From Octopus sinensis (lineage: Eukaryota): a DNA stretch of 64,000 bases. The notes under the pieces were generated by a model that did no database searches, had not been told where the DNA came from, and saw only the letters and a program-made list of their open reading frames with translations. Below are positions 6,003-40,921 of the stretch, one piece after another. Position 1 is the stretch's first letter; every line of letters starts with the position of its first letter. Position numbers and translations under genes: made by a program. The stretch covers positions 5,890,001 through 5,954,000 of the forward strand of contig NC_043009.1 in assembly GCF_006345805.1 (NCBI RefSeq). The letters run 5' to 3'.

Positions 6003-6390
6003 AGGCGGCGAGCTGGCAGAAACTTTAGCACGCCGGGTGGAATGCGTAGCCGTATTTTGTCTGCCGTTACGTTCTGAGTTCAAATTCCGCCGAGGTCGAC
6101 TTTGCCTTTCCTTTCGGGGTCGATAAATTAAGTACCAGTTGCGCACTGGGGTCGATGTAATCGACTAAATCCGTCTGTTTCTCATTGTTTGTCTCCTCTG
6201 TGTTTAGCCCCTTGTGGGTAGTAAAGAAATAGGTATTTCGTCTGCCGCTACGTTCTGAGTTCATATTCCGCCGAGGTAGACTTTGCCCCGTTACGCACTG
6301 GGGTCGATATAATTGACTTTAGCAGTTTGTCTGTCCTTGTTTATCCTCTCTGTGTTTAGCACCTTGTGGGCAGTAAAAAAATAGGTATTT
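6003..6390 (+). mobile_element. SINE family 1 concatemer (full unit plus head-truncated unit)
   Basis: GGCGGCGAGCTGGCAGAAAC..GTTCTGAGTTCAAATTCCGCC; the tail CCCCTTGTGGGTAGTAAAGAAAT joins directly to internal GGTATTTCGTCTG. Confidence 0.9.
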
Positions 6391-9094
6391 TTGCTGCAAT
6401 ATCAATGGTATTTTACTGTTCCTGCGAACAAATTTAACGAATTATTTTATGTGTTTTTACTTCTAGAAATCGAAATTATTTCTCACTTTTAAGCATCAGG
6501 AAACATTCGCCTTAAAACGTAAAAGCATTTCATGCAATCGGGATTAGTTAATCCTTTGTAAACTTCGTTTTTCTGTAGTCTGCGGTAACATATAATTCTT
6601 CTAGTGTACCTACACATTAATACAAATACATATACACATGCGCAGAAATACTCACAAAAAAGACACACACACACACACATACACGTAATTCATATATGTT
6701 ACGTATAATGCTGCTGATACTTGCACCGAAAATATTTTTGTACGGAATTCCTAAGACAAAAAATCAACAGATCAATGAAAATATTAGTAGACGTATTACG
6801 TTTATTGCAAAAAGCGTGTGTTTGATTTTTTTGAATGAGAGGTAAAATAGTATATAAGTCTAGATAGGTACTTATGCGGAAAACCAAAACTAAATCAGAT
6901 TTTATGAAGTGCCGCCAACTGTAATCTTGCAGTTGATGAGTTCTGTCTACGAAGAGAAATATAACACTCCCTAATGGGAAATCTGTTTTTGCTAAAGATT
7001 TCAAATCAAGACATTTTAAGATGCTGAAGTTGTTTGATGGTTGCTAGTATGCATAAGATACATTTCCTATGGTGATACTAAACTAGAGTGTAATGGGAAA
7101 GTACTAACAGAAGTTTCTGTTCTGCTCGAAATAGGTCAACAATATATTTACTGCTAGACTACTGAATAGTAACTTATTATTTTCGTCAAGTTAAACCAAT
7201 TTTGATTCTCTTCCGACGTTACAGATTTACTTGCAACTCGTTAACTTTAGTAATTTCGTTGCTAAATATATTCAAAAATTAGATTGAGAATTTGAAAATG
7301 TTCTTAGGTTGGAAGAAAAACTAACATTGAGCCAAATTACTATTAGAGTTATCTTTGGTTTCGATATATTAATGCTGGATACTATGTGAAGCATGTTTAG
7401 AATTATAAAATTTGAAAATATTTTTAATGGAGCAGATAATTTCTGTAATATTACTGACAGAAACATCGACTTGCTCTTCGGTATCAGTTTTAACGTGCAT
7501 GCTAATGAGATATGCAGGAAATTTTTTTACGTTGTTTTGAGTTTTGAAAGAACGTTAAAGCTGGATGTGCTATGAATTCATACACGGAATCATATTTTTC
7601 GATGCAATTCAAACTTTATAACATGAAAGATAAAGGAGAAATAACTTTACTATGCAAACATTGGTGTTTACCTGTCGCACAAATATATAGTGCTAGAAGC
7701 TACATCAATTTTCCATGTTGACTTTGCAGCAATTTGACGTAAAACTATAGCATTCGAAAATGTCAGCACATATGCACGCCCGCCCATACATAAACACTAA
7801 TACTCACACATATACACAAATGCGCGCACACATTTATTCGTTACCACTTTCACTCTTATCGCACTACTAGTGCTGCGTTAAATAATCCAATATCTCCAAT
7901 GCTATGAGTGGGAACAAAAACAGTAGTGCTATAGATGAAACCTTAGTAGATTATCAATATCTGCACTTACTGAATATTAAGCAGGCTACAAAGTAAACAT
8001 CTCATGCACTGTTATTTGCCACCAATTGCGCAAATAAAATCATGCCTAAGATAATGAAATGATTACAAGTATCCTCAGCAGTGGAATAAAATGTACAAAA
8101 TCTTCAGCATTTCCAAGAGATTGTTGAAATATTCAATATGTATCTGCTGACTTGTAATATCAAGGAAAAATGAAAGGAATAGCATGCTAGATTGGTTTAA
8201 AGTGTTGTGACAAGAAGTCTTGAGATATTTCCGTTATGTGAAAGGCAGTGTTGAAAAGGGATCACGCACCAGCATCTGCTACTGTGTCTATATACATAAT
8301 ATTCCACAAAAGAAATATCGTTCTTGATTTGCGAATTTAAAATTTAATTTAAATTATATATAATAATTCCAATCAAAATTGACTAAAACGTAGGGCAAAG
8401 GTTTGGTTTATCATTTAATACGATTTGGTCATTCATAAATGATGTATTCGAACATCTATTTTACAATATTAGTTTGGTGACTGTAGAAATCTAAATTGAA
8501 ATTTGAAAGTATATAAGCTCGTAAGTATACTTAAATATAGAAATGAAATAGCAACTGTGCTTAATTCTCTCTGTGAAGCAAAAGAAATAAATGTAAAAGA
8601 TAGTGAATTAACCACGATGAAAGCTTATGTAGTATTATTAGATGTGTGAAAAGCTTCTTAAGACGTGACGTAGATAAACATAAGTAGAAGCTCCTATAAG
8701 AAGATAAAATTTGAAGATTATTGAAAATAGCTAGGCATAAATATCAAGAATTATTAGATGCTTTCGTGTCTTCAACACATAGAGTTGCAACAGAAAATTC
8801 TGCTACATGGAATTCAATGTGATATTTTATTTCCTATTTATAGATCACCGCAATTAATAACATATTGGGAGAAAATGCTCAGATAAATGAGAGTATGACA
8901 TCAATCTGAAGCGCTACAATCGGTTTATCTGTAAACTCTCAAATCAAATTTACTAACTCATTGCGAGCGGACTATTCGGATTTAGATGACAGGTGCTCAG
9001 CTCCATCAACATGCAAAACAGTTTATCCTTTGGAGGTTCAGACACACACTCACACAACTTCGCCCACATATCTGCGTATTTATATACATATAGA

Positions 9095-9134
<40 letters not shown>

Positions 9135-9265
9135 TATATATGAAATATTATATATGTGTATACATATGTACAAACATATATTTACATATATATATAATAT
9201 ATATATATATATAAATATATATATGAAATATTATATATGTGTATACATATGTACAAACATATATT

Positions 9266-9310
<45 letters not shown>

Positions 9311-9324
9311 GCTACTTTTAAAAC

Positions 9325-9497
9325 CTAGGGGGCTCATGGGCCCGGTTTCCCGGTTTGAATGGCGTATGTGTTCGCAGCATTACTCATTTTCGCCAGCTGA
9401 GTGGACCGGAGCAACGTAAAATGAAGTGTTTTGCCCAAGACCACAACGCGTCGCCCGGTCCAGGAATCGAAACCACGATCGTACGATCATGCTGCTT
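9325..9497 (-). mobile_element. Short CORE-like SINE
   Basis: Minus-strand GGCGCGTGGCTTAGTG..GGTTTCGATTCCTGG..TTGGGCAAAACACTTCATTTTACGTTGCTCCGGTCCACTCAGCTG. Confidence 0.75.
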
Positions 9498-9563
9498 ACA
9501 CCCTAAACACTAAGCCACGCGCCTCCACATACACACACGGATATATATATATGTACAGAGAGA

Positions 9564-9629
<66 letters not shown>

Positions 9630-9900
9630 ATACAGAGGGTAACAATGGTAAAAATGCTTCCGAGAATATTTTCACTTTCCTATTTAGAATCCTTATTGGA
9701 AAATTTGTAAATATGTTATTTGATGTTCGCCAAGAAATCCGTTAAATAAATCACCGACTAGTTTAGTATATATTAACTATCACAAATAATATATAATACA
9801 ACAATAGAATGGCGATGCAGAATGTACAGTTGTGAAGTGTTTATCCATACACATGACAGTCTAAAATAATTGCGTTTTAAATAATCATATCTAAATTTTG

Positions 9901-10245
9901 GTTTCAAATCTTGGTACAAAGCCTGCAGTTTGGGGGTAGTGGATAAATAAGTCGATTACATCGACTCCAGTCCTGAAGTTGTACTTATTTTGTCGACACC
10001 GAAAGGATAAAAAGCAAAGTAGACTTCAGCGGAAATTTATCTCAGAGCGTTAAGACTGACCAAATACCACCAAACATTTTGCTTGGCGCGCTAACGATTC
10101 TGCTAGTTCACCTCCGTAGTTGGATCGGATTTGTCTTTCATAGTTCTTTGGTCGAGAAAATAACTACCAGTTGATCACTCGGGTCGATGTAATCGATTTG
10201 TCTTTCCCCGAAAATACTAGCTTTGTGTCAACATATGAAACCAAC
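9901..10245. mobile_element. Diverged SINE family 1 copy (minus, 9901-10116) and fragment (plus, ~10140-10245)
   Basis: Degenerate matches to the body and head of the 6003 copy. Confidence 0.7.
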
Positions 10246-10585
10246 ATTACCATAAATAATAATCTGAAAATTGTTCTGTCACAGTCACTCAACCCGTGAG
10301 TAATTAGAGCGAAATGACCCGCAAATTGCACCAAAGATCATTAAGAAGAGAAAAAATCTCCAGCACCGAAGTACTAATTAAAACTAACTAAAGAATACAG
10401 GAGTGTGGTGAATAGAATATATATATATAAAGCCAAGGCAAAATGGTGGTCAGAGCTGTTTGAGGTAGGAATTTATAGGTTTGTTATTAATAGGTTTACT
10501 CCGTTAGCCCATTGGTCAACTGAGAGAAAATGAACGACCTAGCGAATTAATGCTTTTTCCGTCATTCCGTCAGTGTCGTTTCTGG

Positions 10586-10621
<36 letters not shown>

Positions 10622-10623
<2 letters not shown>

Positions 10624-10863
10624 CATTATTGGTGAATTGAAGAAATGGAGCTGAACGCAGATTGAACAGAAATCGTTTTATTTCATTCTACACGTGTTTC
10701 GAAAGGCACAAATTACCAAAATCCGATTGAATAATGGGACCATATTGTGTCTTTCTCATCAGGAAGAAAAAAGGAAATCCGTTGGAAACACAAAAACAGA
10801 ACAGAGGCGGAGCAAAAAACAAATCGAACTGTGCTCCTAAGAGCCCATGGCGAAACTGTTTAT
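10622..10863 (-). repeat. Inverted pseudo-LTR, left arm (242 bp)
   Basis: By eye it is the exact reverse complement of 12191-12432. The ORF track independently shows the same peptide MGPYCVFLIRKKKGNPLETQKQNRGGAKNKSNCAPKSPWRNCL on opposite strands. Confidence 0.95.
10681..10769 (-). ncRNA. Type I hammerhead ribozyme (inverted copy), predicted cleavage on the minus strand between 10689 and 10688
   Basis: Exact reverse complement of the 12285-12373 motif; TCATCAG at 10756-10762. Confidence 0.88.
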
Positions 10864-11680
10864 ACTTACTAAGACCCTATCACCTTTTTCCGGAGGCACA
10901 GCCTCTTCCGCTCCCGGTTTAATGCTCAGTAGGAATAATTATAGTAGTAATAATGAGATGAGAGCCAGTACAGTGACACATAATCTCAGCTCCAGCCAGG
11001 GAGTACCCACTAGGGGTATAGTTATAAATAGGGGTGTTGTGGTTGACGGTAATAATGGGAGTAGGGTAGAGAGCCCCATTAGCATCCCCAGCATCATTTC
11101 CCGCAATAGCAGTACCACGGGCAGTAGCAATGACAGCACTCTGATAGATAGTGGAGAATCAGGGGTTATTCCTATAGTTAATAGTGACGTAGTGGAAAAT
11201 AGAGTAGTAAGCGGCTGCAGGTCTCGGAACGAATATAGTGACAGGAACGCAGTTCTAATTTCAGAAACTAATCCTAGCAGATTAAGATTCACGTCGGCGA
11301 ACTCCAAGATCAAAAACGCCGTCTACCAATGCAAGGTTTACACGGACTCAGATGCCTTCACTTATGTAGGGGCATCATCCTCAAGATTGTCTTTGCGTGT
11401 CTCCAACCATTACGCAACTTTTCGGGACGTGAACAAGCGCCAGACCACGGGACTCAGTAAGCTAATATGGCGACTGAAGGATGCGAACTTAAGCTATAGG
11501 CTGGAATGGTCAATTTTGTCGGTGGCCCTCCCATTTGATAGGGGCAGAAGACAGTGCAACCTTTGTGTCTCCGAACTCTTCCATATTTTGTTTGCCAGAG
11601 GCTGGATGGTAAACGGGCTCTTACAGTCGGCTTTTCGATGCCCCCATTGGCGCCGTTACACTTACCTGGCCTTTAAATAG
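10847..11680 (+). CDS. 277-aa ORF: ~155-aa Ser/Asn/Val-rich low-complexity N-terminus plus C-terminal GIY-YIG endonuclease of PLE type
   Basis: Residues 156-277 (nt 11312-11680) read KNAVY(160)QCKV..TY(173)VG..R(184)VSNH(188)..TGLSKLIWRLK..LEWSIL..C(237)NLC(240)VSE(243)..VN(256)..C(265)PH(267). The GIY/YIG tyrosines, Arg, His, Glu and Asn expected of GIY-YIG nucleases are present, plus CxxC and CxH. No internal stops. The first ATG lies inside the inverted repeat; alternative ATGs are at 10922 and 10958. Confidence 0.88.
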   Translation: MAKLFILTKTLSPFSGGTASSAPGLMLSRNNYSSNNEMRASTVTHNLSSSQGVPTRGIVINRGVVVDGNNGSRVESPISIPSIISRNSSTTGSSNDSTLIDSGESGVIPIVNSDVVENRVVSGCRSRNEYSDRNAVLISETNPSRLRFTSANSKIKNAVYQCKVYTDSDAFTYVGASSSRLSLRVSNHYATFRDVNKRQTTGLSKLIWRLKDANLSYRLEWSILSVALPFDRGRRQCNLCVSELFHILFARGWMVNGLLQSAFRCPHWRRYTYLAFK

Positions 11681-12190
11681 CGTTTATAAATAGTACCGGC
11701 ACCCATAGCCCTTGGTAACAAATTCTGAAATAGCCTTTAAGATATCTACGATTAACCACTGCAAAGAGAATTACTCCTGTAAGACAAACGGGGCTTGGTT
11801 TTCTCACAGCGGGGGGTTTCCTTGACAAGGCAGGCTCAGATGAACACACACACACATAAAACATAATATATATATATTTTTTTTATTTTTTTTCTCTCTG
11901 CCACCCAACGGTTATCACGGCAGTAGCCACTGACAGCCGAACGATCAAACGCACACACGTACACAAAAAATGTTTTCTACCCCTACGCCAACACACACAT
12001 ATATAGAACAGTATACACACACACACGTCTCTAAGTAGATTTTTTCTCGCCCCTTATAAAACATCCAATATTCCTTAAATAGTCAGAACTTTATTCTCGG
12101 TCACAAAGAACATCTATACACCCTCACCCACATGATTGACCGATGCCTGACCCGTTGAATTCTTCAGCCACCGGTTCTCAACATACACTG

Positions 12191-12432
12191 ATAAACAGTT
12201 TCGCCATGGGCTCTTAGGAGCACAGTTCGATTTGTTTTTTGCTCCGCCTCTGTTCTGTTTTTGTGTTTCCAACGGATTTCCTTTTTTCTTCCTGATGAGA
12301 AAGACACAATATGGTCCCATTATTCAATCGGATTTTGGTAATTTGTGCCTTTCGAAACACGTGTAGAATGAAATAAAACGATTTCTGTTCAATCTGCGTT
12401 CAGCTCCATTTCTTCAATTCACCAATAATGTT
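12191..12432 (+). repeat. Pseudo-LTR, right arm (242 bp), sense to the ORF
   Basis: Reverse complement of 10622-10863; contains the sense hammerhead followed by AATAAA at ~12372-12377. Confidence 0.95.
12285..12373 (+). ncRNA. Type I hammerhead ribozyme, predicted GUA cleavage after 12365
   Basis: Stem I TTTCTTC/GAA(T)GAAA; core CTGATGA 12292-12298; stem II GAAAGACACAA (12299-12309) with TTGTGCCTTTC (12343-12353), 10 of 11 pairs and a 33-nt loop; GAAA 12354-12357; palindromic stem III ACACGTGT; cleavage triplet GTA. Confidence 0.88.
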
Positions 12433-12583
12433 TTAATTTCAATTGTCCGCACCAACGCACGGTTGCAACGCCAGATGGTTGTACCTCCAACCGTGCTGTT
12501 TACTGCTGTGATTTTTGCTACTAAGGTATCGGTTAAACTTTTGATTAATCTACTACAAGATTATTCATCTTTCTATTTCACAT

Positions 12584-12617
<34 letters not shown>

Positions 12618-12627
12618 TATATGTATT

Positions 12628-12736
<109 letters not shown>

Positions 12737-12788
12737 ATATATATATATAATATATAATATATATATATATATATATAATATATATATA

Positions 12789-12834
<46 letters not shown>

Positions 12835-14840
12835 ATAGGTGAACACGCAAGCACACACGCATAAACATACGTATGTGTGTATGTGAGTTTGAATGTACGT
12901 GCACGCGCGCGTGTCTACAAGTTAAGGTATAAGTTAACTGTGATTTTGACCATCTGGTGCGTGGGGGCTTGGTTAAACTGCAGAATATTTTTTATGATTC
13001 CAGCTGTTTTACATGCTTTCCTTCATCGAGCTGGCTGGCACCAGCAATATTGAAGGAACGATTAGCTAATGAATTTGACGATAGTACAAGACCGGTACGT
13101 TATTTCACCAAATTCATTAGGGTGAAAGCAAATTTGAGCTGATCACAGCGTGAACACAGAATGTAAAGCGTTGGAAGAAATATGACAAAGCATTAACAGT
13201 TTAGTGAACATACTTGTGTAAACCACCCCAAAGTGACTTGTATTGGTCTGGCAAGAATTATAGCATTTAGTAAAATGGACTGAATGAGTACAGTGAATTT
13301 GACATTCTCCACAGTAAGTTAAATGTACTCTATTTATTGCCCATTTTAGTAGTTAATGACCTATGGAAGAGGAGGATTGATCTGAAGATAGAAACAGAAG
13401 CATATGCTCAGCACAAGCACAAATATAGATTATAAGAGAGTAGAGTTTGTGATGTGCGTATTTATCTATACAAAAAAAGAACTCCATTTTTCTATTTAAA
13501 ATTTAATTATTAAAAAAAATACTTACATACAAACAATCGTAGGAATCTGTGCACCACATGTGTATTCATACAATGAAATTAATTCATCTCAATGTTGGTT
13601 TTTTGAAGCTTGAAGCATTTAGTCTAATTATAAACGTAGAAATTACATATCATACAAAGTGAATCAGTCAATACGGTACTTGTCATACATGCTGAATGAT
13701 AGAGAGGACGAAAAAAAGAGAGAAGCGAATGTGTTAGCATTACCGAGCCTCCTCAAGTTCTTTATCTATAATACTTTCATTGAATTAAACGGATTTTTGA
13801 AGAACTTTGTCGATTGAAGAGGAATAGACACACATGCTTGAACTACGCTACGGAGAGCCAATGGGCATTTTGGTGATGCTTTTTTGGATCTGCTAATCGA
13901 AGAAAGGATGCTTTCTCAATATTATCAACTGACCAAATGTATGAGCAATAAATGCTTCGATATTGCTCAATTTTATCAAATGAATGACCATGAGCGATTA
14001 AAAAAAAAGAAAATACTCACCCGCATGTCCTATCCACATCTTTTAATAACTAACCGTAACGTGAATTTAGAGTGAGCCGAGCTAGCATACTTATCTATGT
14101 ACACAAAACAAAACACACACACGTACACATATACACAAAACAGGCATACACACATATATAATTATATGCATGCACATATATAAATTTACGCATTTATATG
14201 CTTGTAATTTTATTTCTATTGACGTATATGCGTGTGCGGGGGTGCGTAAGAGTGTGCTTCTGAATGAATGTATTTGTATATATGTGTGCGTGTATGTATA
14301 GGCATATATATTTTCCTATGTACATATATTTTACGATGGAGGACAAAACAAGTTCATGAAAATTTCTCGTGAAAATTTGCATGTCAAACAGTTTTTAGAT
14401 TTATTCTCTAGAATCGTGACTAAGAGACATTATATAATAACGATTTTATGCATAAGAAGCTAGACTATTGTTAAATGATATTACCTACGGTATAATTTAC
14501 TCGTTTATAACGGATATATTAACACTATGTACTTTTTCTTTCCCTTAAGCTTCTTTTGTTCAAAGCGCTGCACATTGCTTACCATATGAAATGAGCATAT
14601 AAAAATTGATTTCGTTTAAAATCGTATAAACACAAACTAAAGAGAACGAATAAAAGACAACCTGAATATATTCCAAGTTAGCATATAATAACAGGGAATC
14701 AAAAGAAGTAAATATATCGATAATATACATCAATATTAGAAAAATTTTCACACATACATATACAGGCGCATATATATATATATGCGTGTATGTGCAGTGT
14801 GTGTTTTTTGCGTGTGTGTTTGATTAAGCATGCATATACA

Positions 14841-23049: not shown

Positions 23050-23277
23050 TTACCTATTTCTTTACTACCCACAAGGGGCTAAACACAGAGAGGACAAACA
23101 AGGACAGACAAATGGATTAAGTTGACTATATCGACCCCAGGGCGTAACTGGTACTTATTTAATCGACCCCGAAAGTATGAAAGGCAAAGTCCACCTCAGC
23201 GGAATTTGAACCTAACGGCAGTCGAGATACTGCTAAGCATTTCGCCCGGCGTGCTAAAGTTTCTGCCAGCTCACCGG
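23050..23277 (-). mobile_element. SINE family 1 (duplicated at ~21955-22200)
   Basis: Same body, head and CCCCTTGTGGG tail module as the 6003 copy. Confidence 0.85.
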
Positions 23278-40385: not shown

Positions 40386-40428
<43 letters not shown>

Positions 40429-40921
40429 AGTGAGAAAACGGTATGGACGGATTTTTGGAGTCCAATAACACCCTGTACGTCTATTTGATTATGAAGATTT
40501 ACAAACATAATTTCCCAGTGATTCTCAGTTTACCTACCATTATAAATAATACCAAATGTTCTTTCTCAAACCTTTCATAACGTGATACATGTCTTTCGTG
40601 TAGCAATTGCATGCGGCTGAAGAGGGCTCTTAAACTATCTGTTATGTCGATTATACATTGATGTAAGAATAAGTTGTTTTATAAAACTCGAAACATGTGT
40701 ACCCCGACATCCTTTGTGTCCTGTTTTTCATTTTATTTCATTAGATACACACACACACACACATTATTATATTATTATATTATATGTAGAAAAATACAAA
40801 ACTGGGACAAGAATGTAAAACATTTAGAAGACGATACAAAAAACACGGATGGGACATTCGAAGCCTTCAATCTTCAGTCAAGAACCAATCATCCTATCAA
40901 TTTCGGCATATATATATATAT

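What the first reader, a model, noticed from the sequence alone, without database searches (positions are those of the whole stretch)
10622..12582. Young endonuclease-only Penelope-like element with an intact GIY-YIG ORF, no RT and hammerhead-bearing inverted pLTRs
Seen: one uninterrupted 277-aa ORF whose last ~120 aa are a GIY-YIG domain with the expected catalytic residues and CxxC/CxH motifs, an identical 242-bp inverted repeat around it, and a hammerhead in each arm. Established: autonomous PLEs encode RT and EN in one ORF. As I recall, ENs with this CNLCxxE..LN..CxH signature are of the Naiad/Chlamys type and normally sit directly behind the RT thumb and a CxC..CPxxxxC knuckle. Here the ~140 aa between the inversion junction (10863/10864) and the EN are Ser/Asn/Val-rich low complexity with no RT or knuckle remnant. 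Inference: this may be an RT-less, EN-encoding non-autonomous PLE family mobilised by an RT in trans, or an element with an unusually long RT-EN linker cut by 5' inversion. Zero divergence between the arms implies a very recent event.
Basis: partly seen in the sequence, partly recalled or inferred. Interest (0 to 1): 0.9.

Follow-up and report, generated by a model that had tools for sequence, protein, structure and literature searches.

The report
Truncated octopus Penelope-like retrotransposon copy
This is a young, 5'-cut-off copy of a known kind of jumping gene (a Hydra-clade Penelope-like retrotransposon) inserted in a TA microsatellite of an octopus-like genome; it is not a new reverse-transcriptase-less element, because close relatives continue upstream into a telomerase-like reverse transcriptase.

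Summary
There is an exact 242-bp inverted repeat (10622-10863 / 12191-12432), one 277-aa ORF (10847-11680) ending in a GIY-YIG nuclease domain, a type-I hammerhead in each arm, and (TA)n on both flanks.

The headline interpretation, an RT-less endonuclease-only PLE family, is not supported. The ORF's ATG and first 17 nt come from the inverted arm. From the junction onward the ORF aligns with Octopus sinensis copies. These continue upstream, on the same strand, through the conserved 'YIWFVIPFGKQ...HNNKLL' block into a full RT (L004: 667-aa RT-linker ORF, one frameshift, then the EN). A full-length family member models confidently (pLDDT 91) and its best structural match is telomerase RT.

The motif set (DKT, RWK, no CCHH, CxxC..E..N..CxH, hammerhead, (TA)n targets) is that of the Hydra clade of Craig et al. 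2021. Naiad/Chlamys have an N-terminal EN.

Three lineage features are mildly new. A 130-150-aa Ser/Asn-rich insert sits between RT and EN. The CxCX5C knuckle cysteines are lost while (TA)n insertion persists. A conserved 150-bp 3' tail follows the body. Interest is low.

The parts
10590..10621 (.). (TA)n microsatellite, left flank (target site)
   Evidence: Read directly. The arm starts immediately after it.
10622..10863 (-). Inverted fragment of the element body's 3' end (pLTR part), the reverse complement of 12191-12432
   Evidence: Exact 242-bp inverted repeat. Its outer end coincides with the body 3' end as defined by L001 and by the L004 inverted fragment.
10681..10770 (-). Hammerhead ribozyme motif, inverted-arm copy
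   Evidence: Mirror image of 12284-12373. The core matches at 10762-10696 on the minus strand.
10864..12432 (+). 5'-truncated body of a Hydra-clade PLE (1,569 bp): end of the RT-EN linker, EN, 3' UTR and pLTR part
   Evidence: Collinear with L003 and L004 at protein and DNA level. About 1.9 kb (5' UTR, N-terminal domain, RT, thumb, 'YIWF..HNNKLL' block) is missing relative to L004.
10847..11680 (+). 277-aa ORF. Its ATG and first 17 nt lie in the inverted arm, so the start codon is fortuitous
   Evidence: An in-frame stop lies 3 codons upstream of the ATG.
10865..11251 (+). Ser/Asn/Val-rich low-complexity linker (ORF aa 7-135), a lineage-specific insert between the 'HNxKLL' block and the EN
   Evidence: Alignment A1. 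It is homologous to the L003/L004/P0001 tracts. 30% aa identity to L003, dN 0.61 / dS 1.25. Composition.
11252..11677 (+). GIY-YIG endonuclease domain with a degenerate, cysteine-less knuckle (ORF aa 136-277)
   Evidence: 66-68% aa identity to L003/L004; dN 0.22-0.23 with dS saturated.
11681..12190 (+). 3' untranslated region between the stop codon and the repeated arm
   Evidence: Read directly. It has no ORF or homology beyond L003/L004 collinearity.
12191..12432 (+). Right arm, the last 242 bp of the element body (pLTR part)
12284..12373 (+). Type-I hammerhead. Helix I is 12284-12291/12366-12373, CUGAUGA is 12292-12298, and helix II is 12299-12309/12343-12353. GAAA is 12354-12357. Helix III is 12357-12358/12363-12364 with the palindromic loop ACGU. 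The predicted cleavage site is after A12365.
   Evidence: The architecture is as described for metazoan and PLE hammerheads in PMC4209133.
12433..12582 (+). 150-bp 3' 'tail', present only at the right end and conserved in L003 and L004
   Evidence: In L003/L004 a (TA)3 separates it from the body. It is absent from the inverted arm and from L001.
12583..12840 (.). (TA)n-rich microsatellite, right flank (target site)

Best explanation
The feature is a single, recent, dead-on-arrival insertion of an autonomous Hydra-clade Penelope-like retrotransposon into a (TA)n microsatellite of an octopod genome.

Shown:
- The direct part (10864-12582) is the 3' 1.7 kb of an element whose full-length relatives are about 3.5 kb. 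[quoted passage not shown]
- The copy is cut immediately after the HNxKLL block and joined head-to-head to a 242-bp inverted copy of the body's own 3' end.
- The ORF's ATG is supplied by that inverted piece.
- The long Ser/Asn-rich stretch is a lineage-specific linker insert shared with Octopus sinensis copies. It is not the N-terminus of an EN-only protein.

Inferred:
- The parent element's EN nicked the (TA)n, and target-primed reverse transcription started at the RNA 3' end (the tail) and stopped early at 10864.
- A second short cDNA, primed from the opposite target strand at the TA-rich body/tail boundary, gave the inverted arm. This resembles twin priming and is the usual PLE 'inverted 5'-truncated copy'.
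- The hammerhead in the pLTR belongs to the parent's RNA processing and is active as a dimer. It has no role in this dead copy.
- The intact ORF and identical arms reflect youth, not selection on this copy.
For: (1) Window ORF aa 6-277 aligns end-to-end with L003 (46% identity) and aa 87-276 with L004 (60.5%). DNA identity is 68-74% through the EN, pLTR and tail.

(2) In alignment A1 the window sequence enters right after the conserved HNxKLL block. L003's 377-aa ORF and P0151 (351 aa) run in frame from that point upstream into 'YIWFVIPFGKQ' and the RT thumb.

(3) L004 has a 667-aa ORF with DKT (aa 57), FYPSV (198), YRDD (287), the thumb, YIWFVIPF (495) and HNNKLL (552). The N/S tract follows, with one frameshift, and then a 161-aa EN ORF.

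(4) A search with the L004 RT region found 555 homologs. Those listed are mostly about 700 aa on about 2.5-kb contigs, and the ones read (e.g. P0160) carry RT plus EN.

(5) The P0160 model has pLDDT 91.4. Its best PDB match is TERT 3du5 (E 9.8e-9), followed by other RTs.

(6) The diagnostic motifs match the published Hydra-clade description.

(7) L004's full-length copy also carries an inverted pLTR fragment (42 bp, 100% identical). Its outer end falls at the same pLTR position and abuts (TA)n. L001's copy ends at that same position against (TA)n.

(8) An inverted 5'-truncated copy adjacent to the 5' end, a one-sided tail and (TA)n targeting are published PLE/Hydra traits.

(9) The ATG lies in the arm, with an in-frame stop 3 codons upstream.
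Against: - The RT-bearing relatives are a sister lineage from another species (60-68% aa identity in the EN), not the same family in the same genome. I could not search the source genome, so a same-family full-length copy was not seen.
- No sequence-based tool recognises the RT. The RT call rests on motifs, one precomputed RVT_1 hit (P0233) and the structure comparison.
- The tail is 150 bp, against the 30-40 bp described for PLEs.
- The two-cDNA origin of the inverted arm is inference only.
Confidence: 0.85

Rival explanations
1. One reading: an RT-less, EN-encoding non-autonomous PLE family whose 277-aa protein is made and which is mobilised by an RT supplied in trans.
For: The ORF is uninterrupted and the EN residues are intact. 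The arms are identical, so the copy is young. Most database relatives are short EN-only protein models, although these look like gene calls on truncated copies.
Against: - The ORF start is chimeric: the ATG lies in the inverted arm.
- The junction falls inside coding sequence that in relatives continues upstream into the linker block and RT.
- The adjacent pLTR fragment points away from the ORF, so no sense-oriented pLTR precedes it.
- The window holds no second copy.
- No identical or near-identical protein is on record.
Confidence: 0.05
2. The inverted arm is not part of the insertion event. It would be either an assembly artefact (a fold-back chimera in long reads) or a later local inverted duplication.
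For: 100% identity over 242 bp is what an artefact would also give. The region is flanked by long (TA)n tracts that are hard to assemble.
Against: An independent O. sinensis copy (L004) has the same kind of inverted fragment, with its outer end at the same pLTR position against (TA)n. The window arm's outer end coincides exactly with the body end as defined by L001. Such inverted copies are a documented PLE trait.
Confidence: 0.07
3. A Naiad/Chlamys-type element (N-terminal EN) that lost its downstream RT by internal deletion.
For: The stop codon directly after the EN and the absence of an RT downstream would fit a deleted N-terminal-EN element.
Against: In all relatives the EN is C-terminal to the RT. 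There is no CCHH and no CxC-KR linker after the EN. A canonical hammerhead is present, which Naiad/Chlamys lack.
Confidence: 0.01

Closest known systems
Hydra clade of C-terminal EN+ Penelope-like elements (Craig, Yushenova, Rodriguez, Arkhipova 2021, PMC8557442)
   Same: - Single ORF with RT followed by a C-terminal GIY-YIG EN.
- No CCHH between GIY and YIG.
- CxxC and CxH flank the conserved E and N.
- DKT replaces DKG, and an RW(K) motif is present.
- Hammerhead in the pLTR.
- Insertions in (TA)n.
- Already reported in Mollusca.
   Different: - The Octopus copies (window, L001, L003, L004) have lost every cysteine of the CxCX5C knuckle.
- They carry a 130-150-aa Ser/Asn-rich insert at that site.
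- The unit is about 3.5 kb rather than <3 kb.
- The one-sided tail is about 130-150 bp rather than 30-40 bp.
- Argonauta (P0017) and P0155 have the N-rich insert but keep the knuckle.
Penelope/Poseidon, Neptune and Nematis PLEs
   Same: TERT-like RT plus a C-terminal GIY-YIG EN. pLTRs with hammerheads. Frequent 5' truncation with an inverted upstream copy.
   Different: Those clades have the CCHH motif inside the EN and DKG rather than DKT. This lineage has neither.
Naiad/Chlamys PLEs
   Same: PLE-type RT and GIY-YIG EN, a bias for microsatellite targets, and pLTRs with tails.
   Different: The EN is N-terminal and followed by a CxC linker and an IFD-containing RT. There are no canonical hammerheads, and Naiads keep CCHH. 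None of this applies here.
L1 'twin-priming' 5' inversions (my own knowledge: Ostertag and Kazazian 2001)
   Same: A 5'-truncated retrotransposon copy joined to an inverted segment made in the same integration event.
   Different: In L1 the inverted segment is the sequence upstream of the direct part. Here it duplicates part of the direct copy's own 3' end, which needs two templates or template re-use.
Non-LTR retrozymes (hammerhead-bearing non-autonomous PLE derivatives; PMC7229834, bioRxiv 10.64898/2026.07.22.740005)
   Same: Type-I hammerheads with a short helix III and a palindromic loop, related to PLE pLTRs.
   Different: Retrozymes are small, non-coding tandem units. This is a coding, truncated copy of the autonomous element.

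Membership tests
Penelope-like elements (PLE) | Homology to a full-length element that encodes a TERT-related RT | tested here: met
   The window copy is collinear with L004, whose 667-aa ORF has RT motifs. The family model's best PDB match is TERT 3du5, E 9.8e-9.
Penelope-like elements (PLE) | RT encoded by this copy itself (autonomy) | tested here: not met
   tblastn with RT-bearing relatives hits only the EN in the window. The copy is truncated about 1.9 kb from the 5' end. It is therefore a defective copy, not an autonomous element.
Penelope-like elements (PLE) | GIY-YIG endonuclease domain | tested here: met
   Support is at family level: Pfam hits in 12/52 members, an AF2 model whose nearest folds are EndoII, Hpy188I and I-TevI, and conserved Y, YxG, R, H, E and N. 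The window ORF alone is below Pfam detection.
Penelope-like elements (PLE) | pLTR / inverted 5'-truncated copy / one-sided tail architecture | tested here: met
   with the description in PMC8557442. The tail is longer than described.
Penelope-like elements (PLE) | Hammerhead ribozyme in the pLTR | tested here: met
   The core occurs 2 times versus 0.02 expected. Pairing and covariation on 4 copies support the fold. There is NO Rfam hit, and the monomer MFE fold is not better than shuffles. Self-cleavage was not tested.
Hydra clade | EN C-terminal to the RT, no CCHH, CxxC and CxH around E and N | tested here: met
   Window: C237xxC240, E243, N256, C265xH267, with only one Cys between GIY and YIG. 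The domain order is seen in L004 and P0160.
Hydra clade | CxCX5C linker knuckle | tested here: not met
   All knuckle cysteines are replaced in the window, L001, L003 and L004. They are present in the rest of the family, including Argonauta P0017 and P0155. I read this as a secondary loss in an Octopus sublineage.
Hydra clade | DKT instead of DKG; RWK motif | tested here: met
   Not present in the window copy because it is truncated. L004 has 'QSDKTRN', its second copy has 'RIRWLAFF', and P0160 has 'RMRWKAHFF' and 'ADKTRN'.
Hydra clade | Insertion into (TA)n | tested here: met
   The window has (TA)n on both flanks. L001, L003 and L004 ends abut (TA)n.
Hydra clade | Generally short (<3 kb) | tested here: not met
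   The L004 body is 3,468 bp, or 3,599 bp with the tail. The excess is largely the linker insert and the tail. Other family members sit on about 2.5-kb contigs.
Naiad/Chlamys | N-terminal EN followed by a CxC linker and an IFD-containing RT; no canonical hammerhead | tested here: not met
   The domain order is RT then EN, and a hammerhead is present.

The most novel reading that the evidence does not exclude
The most novel reading not excluded is that the source genome holds a family of such RT-less copies, that the chimeric 277-aa ORF is expressed, and that it supplies a free-standing GIY-YIG nuclease, mobilised or used in trans. A more modest and much more likely novelty is that an active Octopus sublineage of Hydra PLEs has lost the CxCX5C zinc knuckle yet still inserts into (TA)n. 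That would argue against the proposal that this knuckle directs (TA)n targeting. I put its probability at about 0.5 and its interest at about 0.35.
Probability: 0.04. Interest if true: 0.7.

Novelty: new variant of a known kind. Interest (0 to 1): 0.2.

Why it matters
The evidence shows an ordinary truncated copy instead, so that claim should be dropped.

Three things of modest value remain:
- It documents Hydra-clade PLEs as recently active in octopods.
- It gives a natural test of the idea that the EN-proximal zinc knuckle directs (TA)n targeting. The Octopus sublineage has lost every knuckle cysteine and gained a long disordered linker, yet all four copies examined still sit in (TA)n.
- It shows that current curated models (Rfam hammerheads, Pfam RVT_1 and GIY-YIG) miss this clade entirely. 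As a result its fragments are annotated as 'myb-like', 'GATA zinc finger' or even bacterial proteins.

Tried and rejected
- Rfam, three ways (E<=1 on 5 kb, E<=10 on the arm, gathering score on the whole window), found no hammerhead. I therefore used core-motif statistics and covariation instead.
- The single-strand MFE fold of the hammerhead region is no better than shuffles (z = 0.54). This is compatible with a dimer-type ribozyme but is not support.
- Pfam and PDB sequence searches on the window ORF, on the L004 RT, and with family profiles found nothing significant.
- An exact-protein look-up of the window ORF found nothing on record, so neither the source genome nor same-family copies could be retrieved.
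- The supplements of Craig et al. are not held as text, so I could not compare directly with their Hydra consensus sequences.
- I looked for similarity between the 150-bp tail and the 5' end of full-length L004 copies, in both orientations. Only a roughly 12-nt palindromic match (GGTATCGGTTA / TAACCGATACC) turned up, below significance.
- The consensus fold of the tail, with 3 sequences, shows a conserved 3' hairpin but no informative covariation.
- dN/dS on the low-complexity linker (about 0.5) is unreliable because of the alignment, and dS in the EN is saturated.
- I rejected Naiad/Chlamys, retrozyme and domesticated-gene readings (see rivals).
Full report
**1. What is in the sequence**

Base-by-base extension gives an exact 242-bp inverted repeat, 10622-10863 and 12191-12432, with no mismatch. 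The repeat tool's 245 nt adds three flanking bases, one of them mismatched. The left arm starts directly after a (TA)n run (10590-10621). To the right, 150 bp of unique sequence (12433-12582) lie between the arm and a long (TA)n tract.

One ORF of 277 aa runs from 10847 to 11680 on the + strand. It is the only ORF of >=130 aa in the 64-kb window that is not microsatellite translation. Its ATG and first 17 nt lie inside the left arm, and an in-frame stop sits three codons upstream. The window has no second copy.

**2. The endonuclease**

Curated models do not recognise the ORF. Pfam gives nothing at E<=10, and PDB sequences give nothing relevant.

An exhaustive HMMER search finds 2,288 representative clusters at E<=1e-3 and 290 at E<=1e-10. 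In the best 150 listed, all matches fall in the ORF's C-terminal part except the closest relatives P0001 and P0002, which also reach into the linker. Among 52 aligned relatives, PF01541 (GIY-YIG) is the only Pfam family that recurs (12 members, best E 1.2e-4).

An AlphaFold model of window aa 150-277 built on that alignment is confident (pLDDT 87.8, pTM 0.79) and has beta-beta-alpha-alpha-beta-alpha topology. Its nearest solved folds are three GIY-YIG nucleases: T4 EndoII, Hpy188I and I-TevI. The Foldseek E-values are weak (0.14-1.8) and TMt reaches 0.60.

The conserved columns are Y160, Y173-x-G175, R184, H188, C237xxC240, E243, N256 and C265xH267. The GIY-YIG call stands at family level.

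**3. The hammerhead**

Rfam finds no hammerhead under any setting, and the monomer does not fold better than shuffled sequence. Other evidence supports the motif:
- CUGAUGAG...CGAAAC occurs once in each arm, against 0.02 expected per window.
- On an alignment of four octopus pLTRs (window, L001, L003, L004), a standard type-I model is 85.7% paired, against 35-51% when the partners are slid.
- Six pairs have changes on both sides, four of them in helix II.
- Helix III is 2 bp closed by a palindromic tetraloop (ACGU, AUAU or AUGU), and G10.1-C11.1 is present in the window and L001.

This is the architecture described for metazoan and PLE hammerheads that act as dimers (PMC4209133). The predicted cleavage site is after A12365. 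Self-cleavage itself is inferred, not shown.

**4. What the ORF's N-terminal part is**

The closest database proteins are Octopus sinensis gene models. Their loci show the following.

L003 has a 377-aa ORF to which window aa 6-277 align end-to-end (46% identity). DNA identity is 72-74% in the EN, the pLTR and the last 150 bp.

In the family alignment the window sequence enters exactly after a conserved block '...IIxxHNxKLL'. The window's 'LTKTLSPFSGG' corresponds to L003's 'LNKTLSPMSGD' and P0151's 'LNKTLSPTFGD'. Upstream of that point, L003 and P0151 continue in frame into 'YIWFVIPFGKQIRSNLPLQF...' and the RT thumb ('NFLDVTLNL..YCPYHKP..SNH').

L004 is nearly intact. Its 667-aa ORF (9053-11056) contains DKT (aa 57), FDIASFYPSV (198), GLYRDDCLF (287), the thumb, YIWFVIPF (495), HNNKLL (552) and the Ser/Asn tract. 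A single frameshift inside the tract is followed by a 161-aa EN ORF.

The Ser/Asn/Val-rich 130 aa of the window ORF are therefore a lineage-specific insert in the RT-EN linker. They are shared by all Octopus copies, and the window copy is cut about 1.9 kb from the 5' end.

**5. Which family**

Using the L004 RT region as query gives 555 homologs. Those listed are mostly about 700 aa on about 2.5-kb contigs. P0160 (706 aa) shows the whole architecture:
- 'RMRWKAHFF'
- 'ADKTRN'
- an RT core with 'YRDDG'
- the thumb
- 'IIWFNPPYS..KHF..SYSC..HNAKLL'
- 'CNCRNKETCP' (CxCX5C)
- an EN without cysteines between GIY and YIG, and with CRLC..E..N..CRH

Sequence methods do not recognise the RT, which fits the published remark that this clade's RT is unusually divergent. 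However, an AlphaFold model of P0160 is very confident (pLDDT 91.4, pTM 0.88). Its best PDB matches are telomerase RTs (3du5, E 9.8e-9), followed by DRT9/DRT2, LINE-1 ORF2p, R2 and retron RTs.

A TERT-like RT fused to a C-terminal GIY-YIG EN makes this a PLE. The combination of DKT, RWK, no CCHH, CxCX5C, CxxC/CxH, canonical hammerheads and (TA)n targets is the definition of the Hydra clade in Craig et al. 2021, already reported from Mollusca.

**6. Ends and the inverted arm**

Comparison of right ends shows that the element body ends at window 12432 ('...CACCAATAATGTT'). At that homologous position the L001 copy, the L004 inverted fragment and the window's left arm all abut (TA)n. The 150 bp at 12433-12582 are a conserved 'tail' (about 73% identical in L003 and L004). 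In L003 and L004 a (TA)3 separates the tail from the body, and (TA)n follows it.

L004's full-length copy also starts with an inverted pLTR fragment. It is 42 bp, 100% identical to its own 3' pLTR, and lies next to (TA)n. Inverted 5'-truncated copies and a one-sided tail are published PLE traits. Here the tail is longer than the 30-40 bp described.

I infer that one cDNA was primed at the RNA 3' end (the tail) and aborted at 10864. A second, 242-nt cDNA was primed from the other target strand at the TA-rich body/tail boundary, and the two were joined. This is inference. The sequence itself shows only that both arms came from one event and that the pattern recurs.

**7. Age and selection**

No difference in 242 bp means the arms were made recently, or are homogenised. 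The intact ORF is then expected without selection on this copy. Between lineages the EN has dN of about 0.22 with saturated dS. The linker has dN 0.61 and dS 1.25, but its alignment is unreliable. This fits long-term constraint on the EN of an autonomous element and a fast-evolving linker.

**8. What is mildly new**

All four Octopus copies have replaced every cysteine of the CxCX5C knuckle and carry the 130-150-aa Ser/Asn insert. Argonauta hians P0017 and P0155 have an N-rich insert at the same site but keep the knuckle. All four knuckle-less copies still lie in (TA)n. Craig et al. suggested that this linker is associated with (TA)n targeting. If the knuckle-less lineage is active, as the identical arms here and the near-intact L004 suggest, the knuckle is not required for that preference.

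**9. Context**

The window shares 114 dispersed-repeat matches (75-91% identity) with the O. sinensis loci and is otherwise microsatellite-rich non-coding DNA without tRNA or Rfam hits. An octopod source is likely, but the species is not identified.

**10. Verdict**

The interpretation as an RT-less endonuclease-only PLE is not supported. The feature is an ordinary young 5'-truncated/inverted insertion of a Hydra-clade PLE, from an Octopus sublineage that deviates from the clade description in its linker, knuckle and tail. Confidence is 0.85 and interest is 0.2.

Noticed in passing
window 40617-40694 (+), with (TA)n at 40400-40427: A second hammerhead-like motif (CTGAAGAG...CGAAAC-ATGT-GTA) has the same helix III/loop pattern as the L001 copy, but its helix II is weak. 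It has no similarity to L001-L004 or to the element. It may be a degenerate pLTR or retrozyme-like remnant of another PLE family.
   Followed up: partly
window, e.g. 6005-6232, 23054-23276, 9298-9538; L003 505-734, 7554-7821; L004 346-574: The window shares 114 matches to short dispersed repeats (SINE-like, 150-230 bp, 75-91% identity) with Octopus sinensis loci. This points to an octopod source genome.
   Followed up: partly
L004 8843-12441 and 12502-13442; L001 6929-8083 (-) and 9908-10954 (+): Hydra-clade PLE copies cluster at the same (TA)n sites. In L004, two copies 78% identical lie one after the other around one (TA)n. In L001, two copies lie head-to-head.
   Followed up: partly
window 12433-12582; L003 11552-11698; L004 12311-12441: The 150-bp tail has a conserved 3'-proximal hairpin (GAUUAAUCU...AGAUUAUUC) and, in the window and L004, a GCACGGUUG/CAACCGUGC stem. 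The window tail folds somewhat better than shuffles (z = -1.98), but three sequences give no covariation.
   Followed up: partly
P0151, P0001 (O. sinensis), P0159 (Argonauta hians); P0206, P0259: Public annotations of fragments of this PLE are misleading: 'myb-like protein I', 'DDB_G0288805-like' and 'GATA zinc finger domain-containing protein 14-like', all driven by the N-rich tract. Two family members are filed as proteins of bacterial MAGs, which is probably eukaryotic TE DNA in metagenome bins.
   Followed up: no
P0017 (Argonauta hians), P0155 (Logan assembly): Related octopod or unknown-host elements carry an Asn-rich low-complexity insert at the same linker position but keep the CxCX5C knuckle. 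The insert therefore seems to predate the loss of the knuckle in the Octopus copies.
   Followed up: partly
table (PF26215.1, PF28514.1): Many full-length family members carry precomputed hits to Pfam PF26215 and PF28514. The Pfam copy available here did not report these families, so I could not establish what they describe.
   Followed up: no
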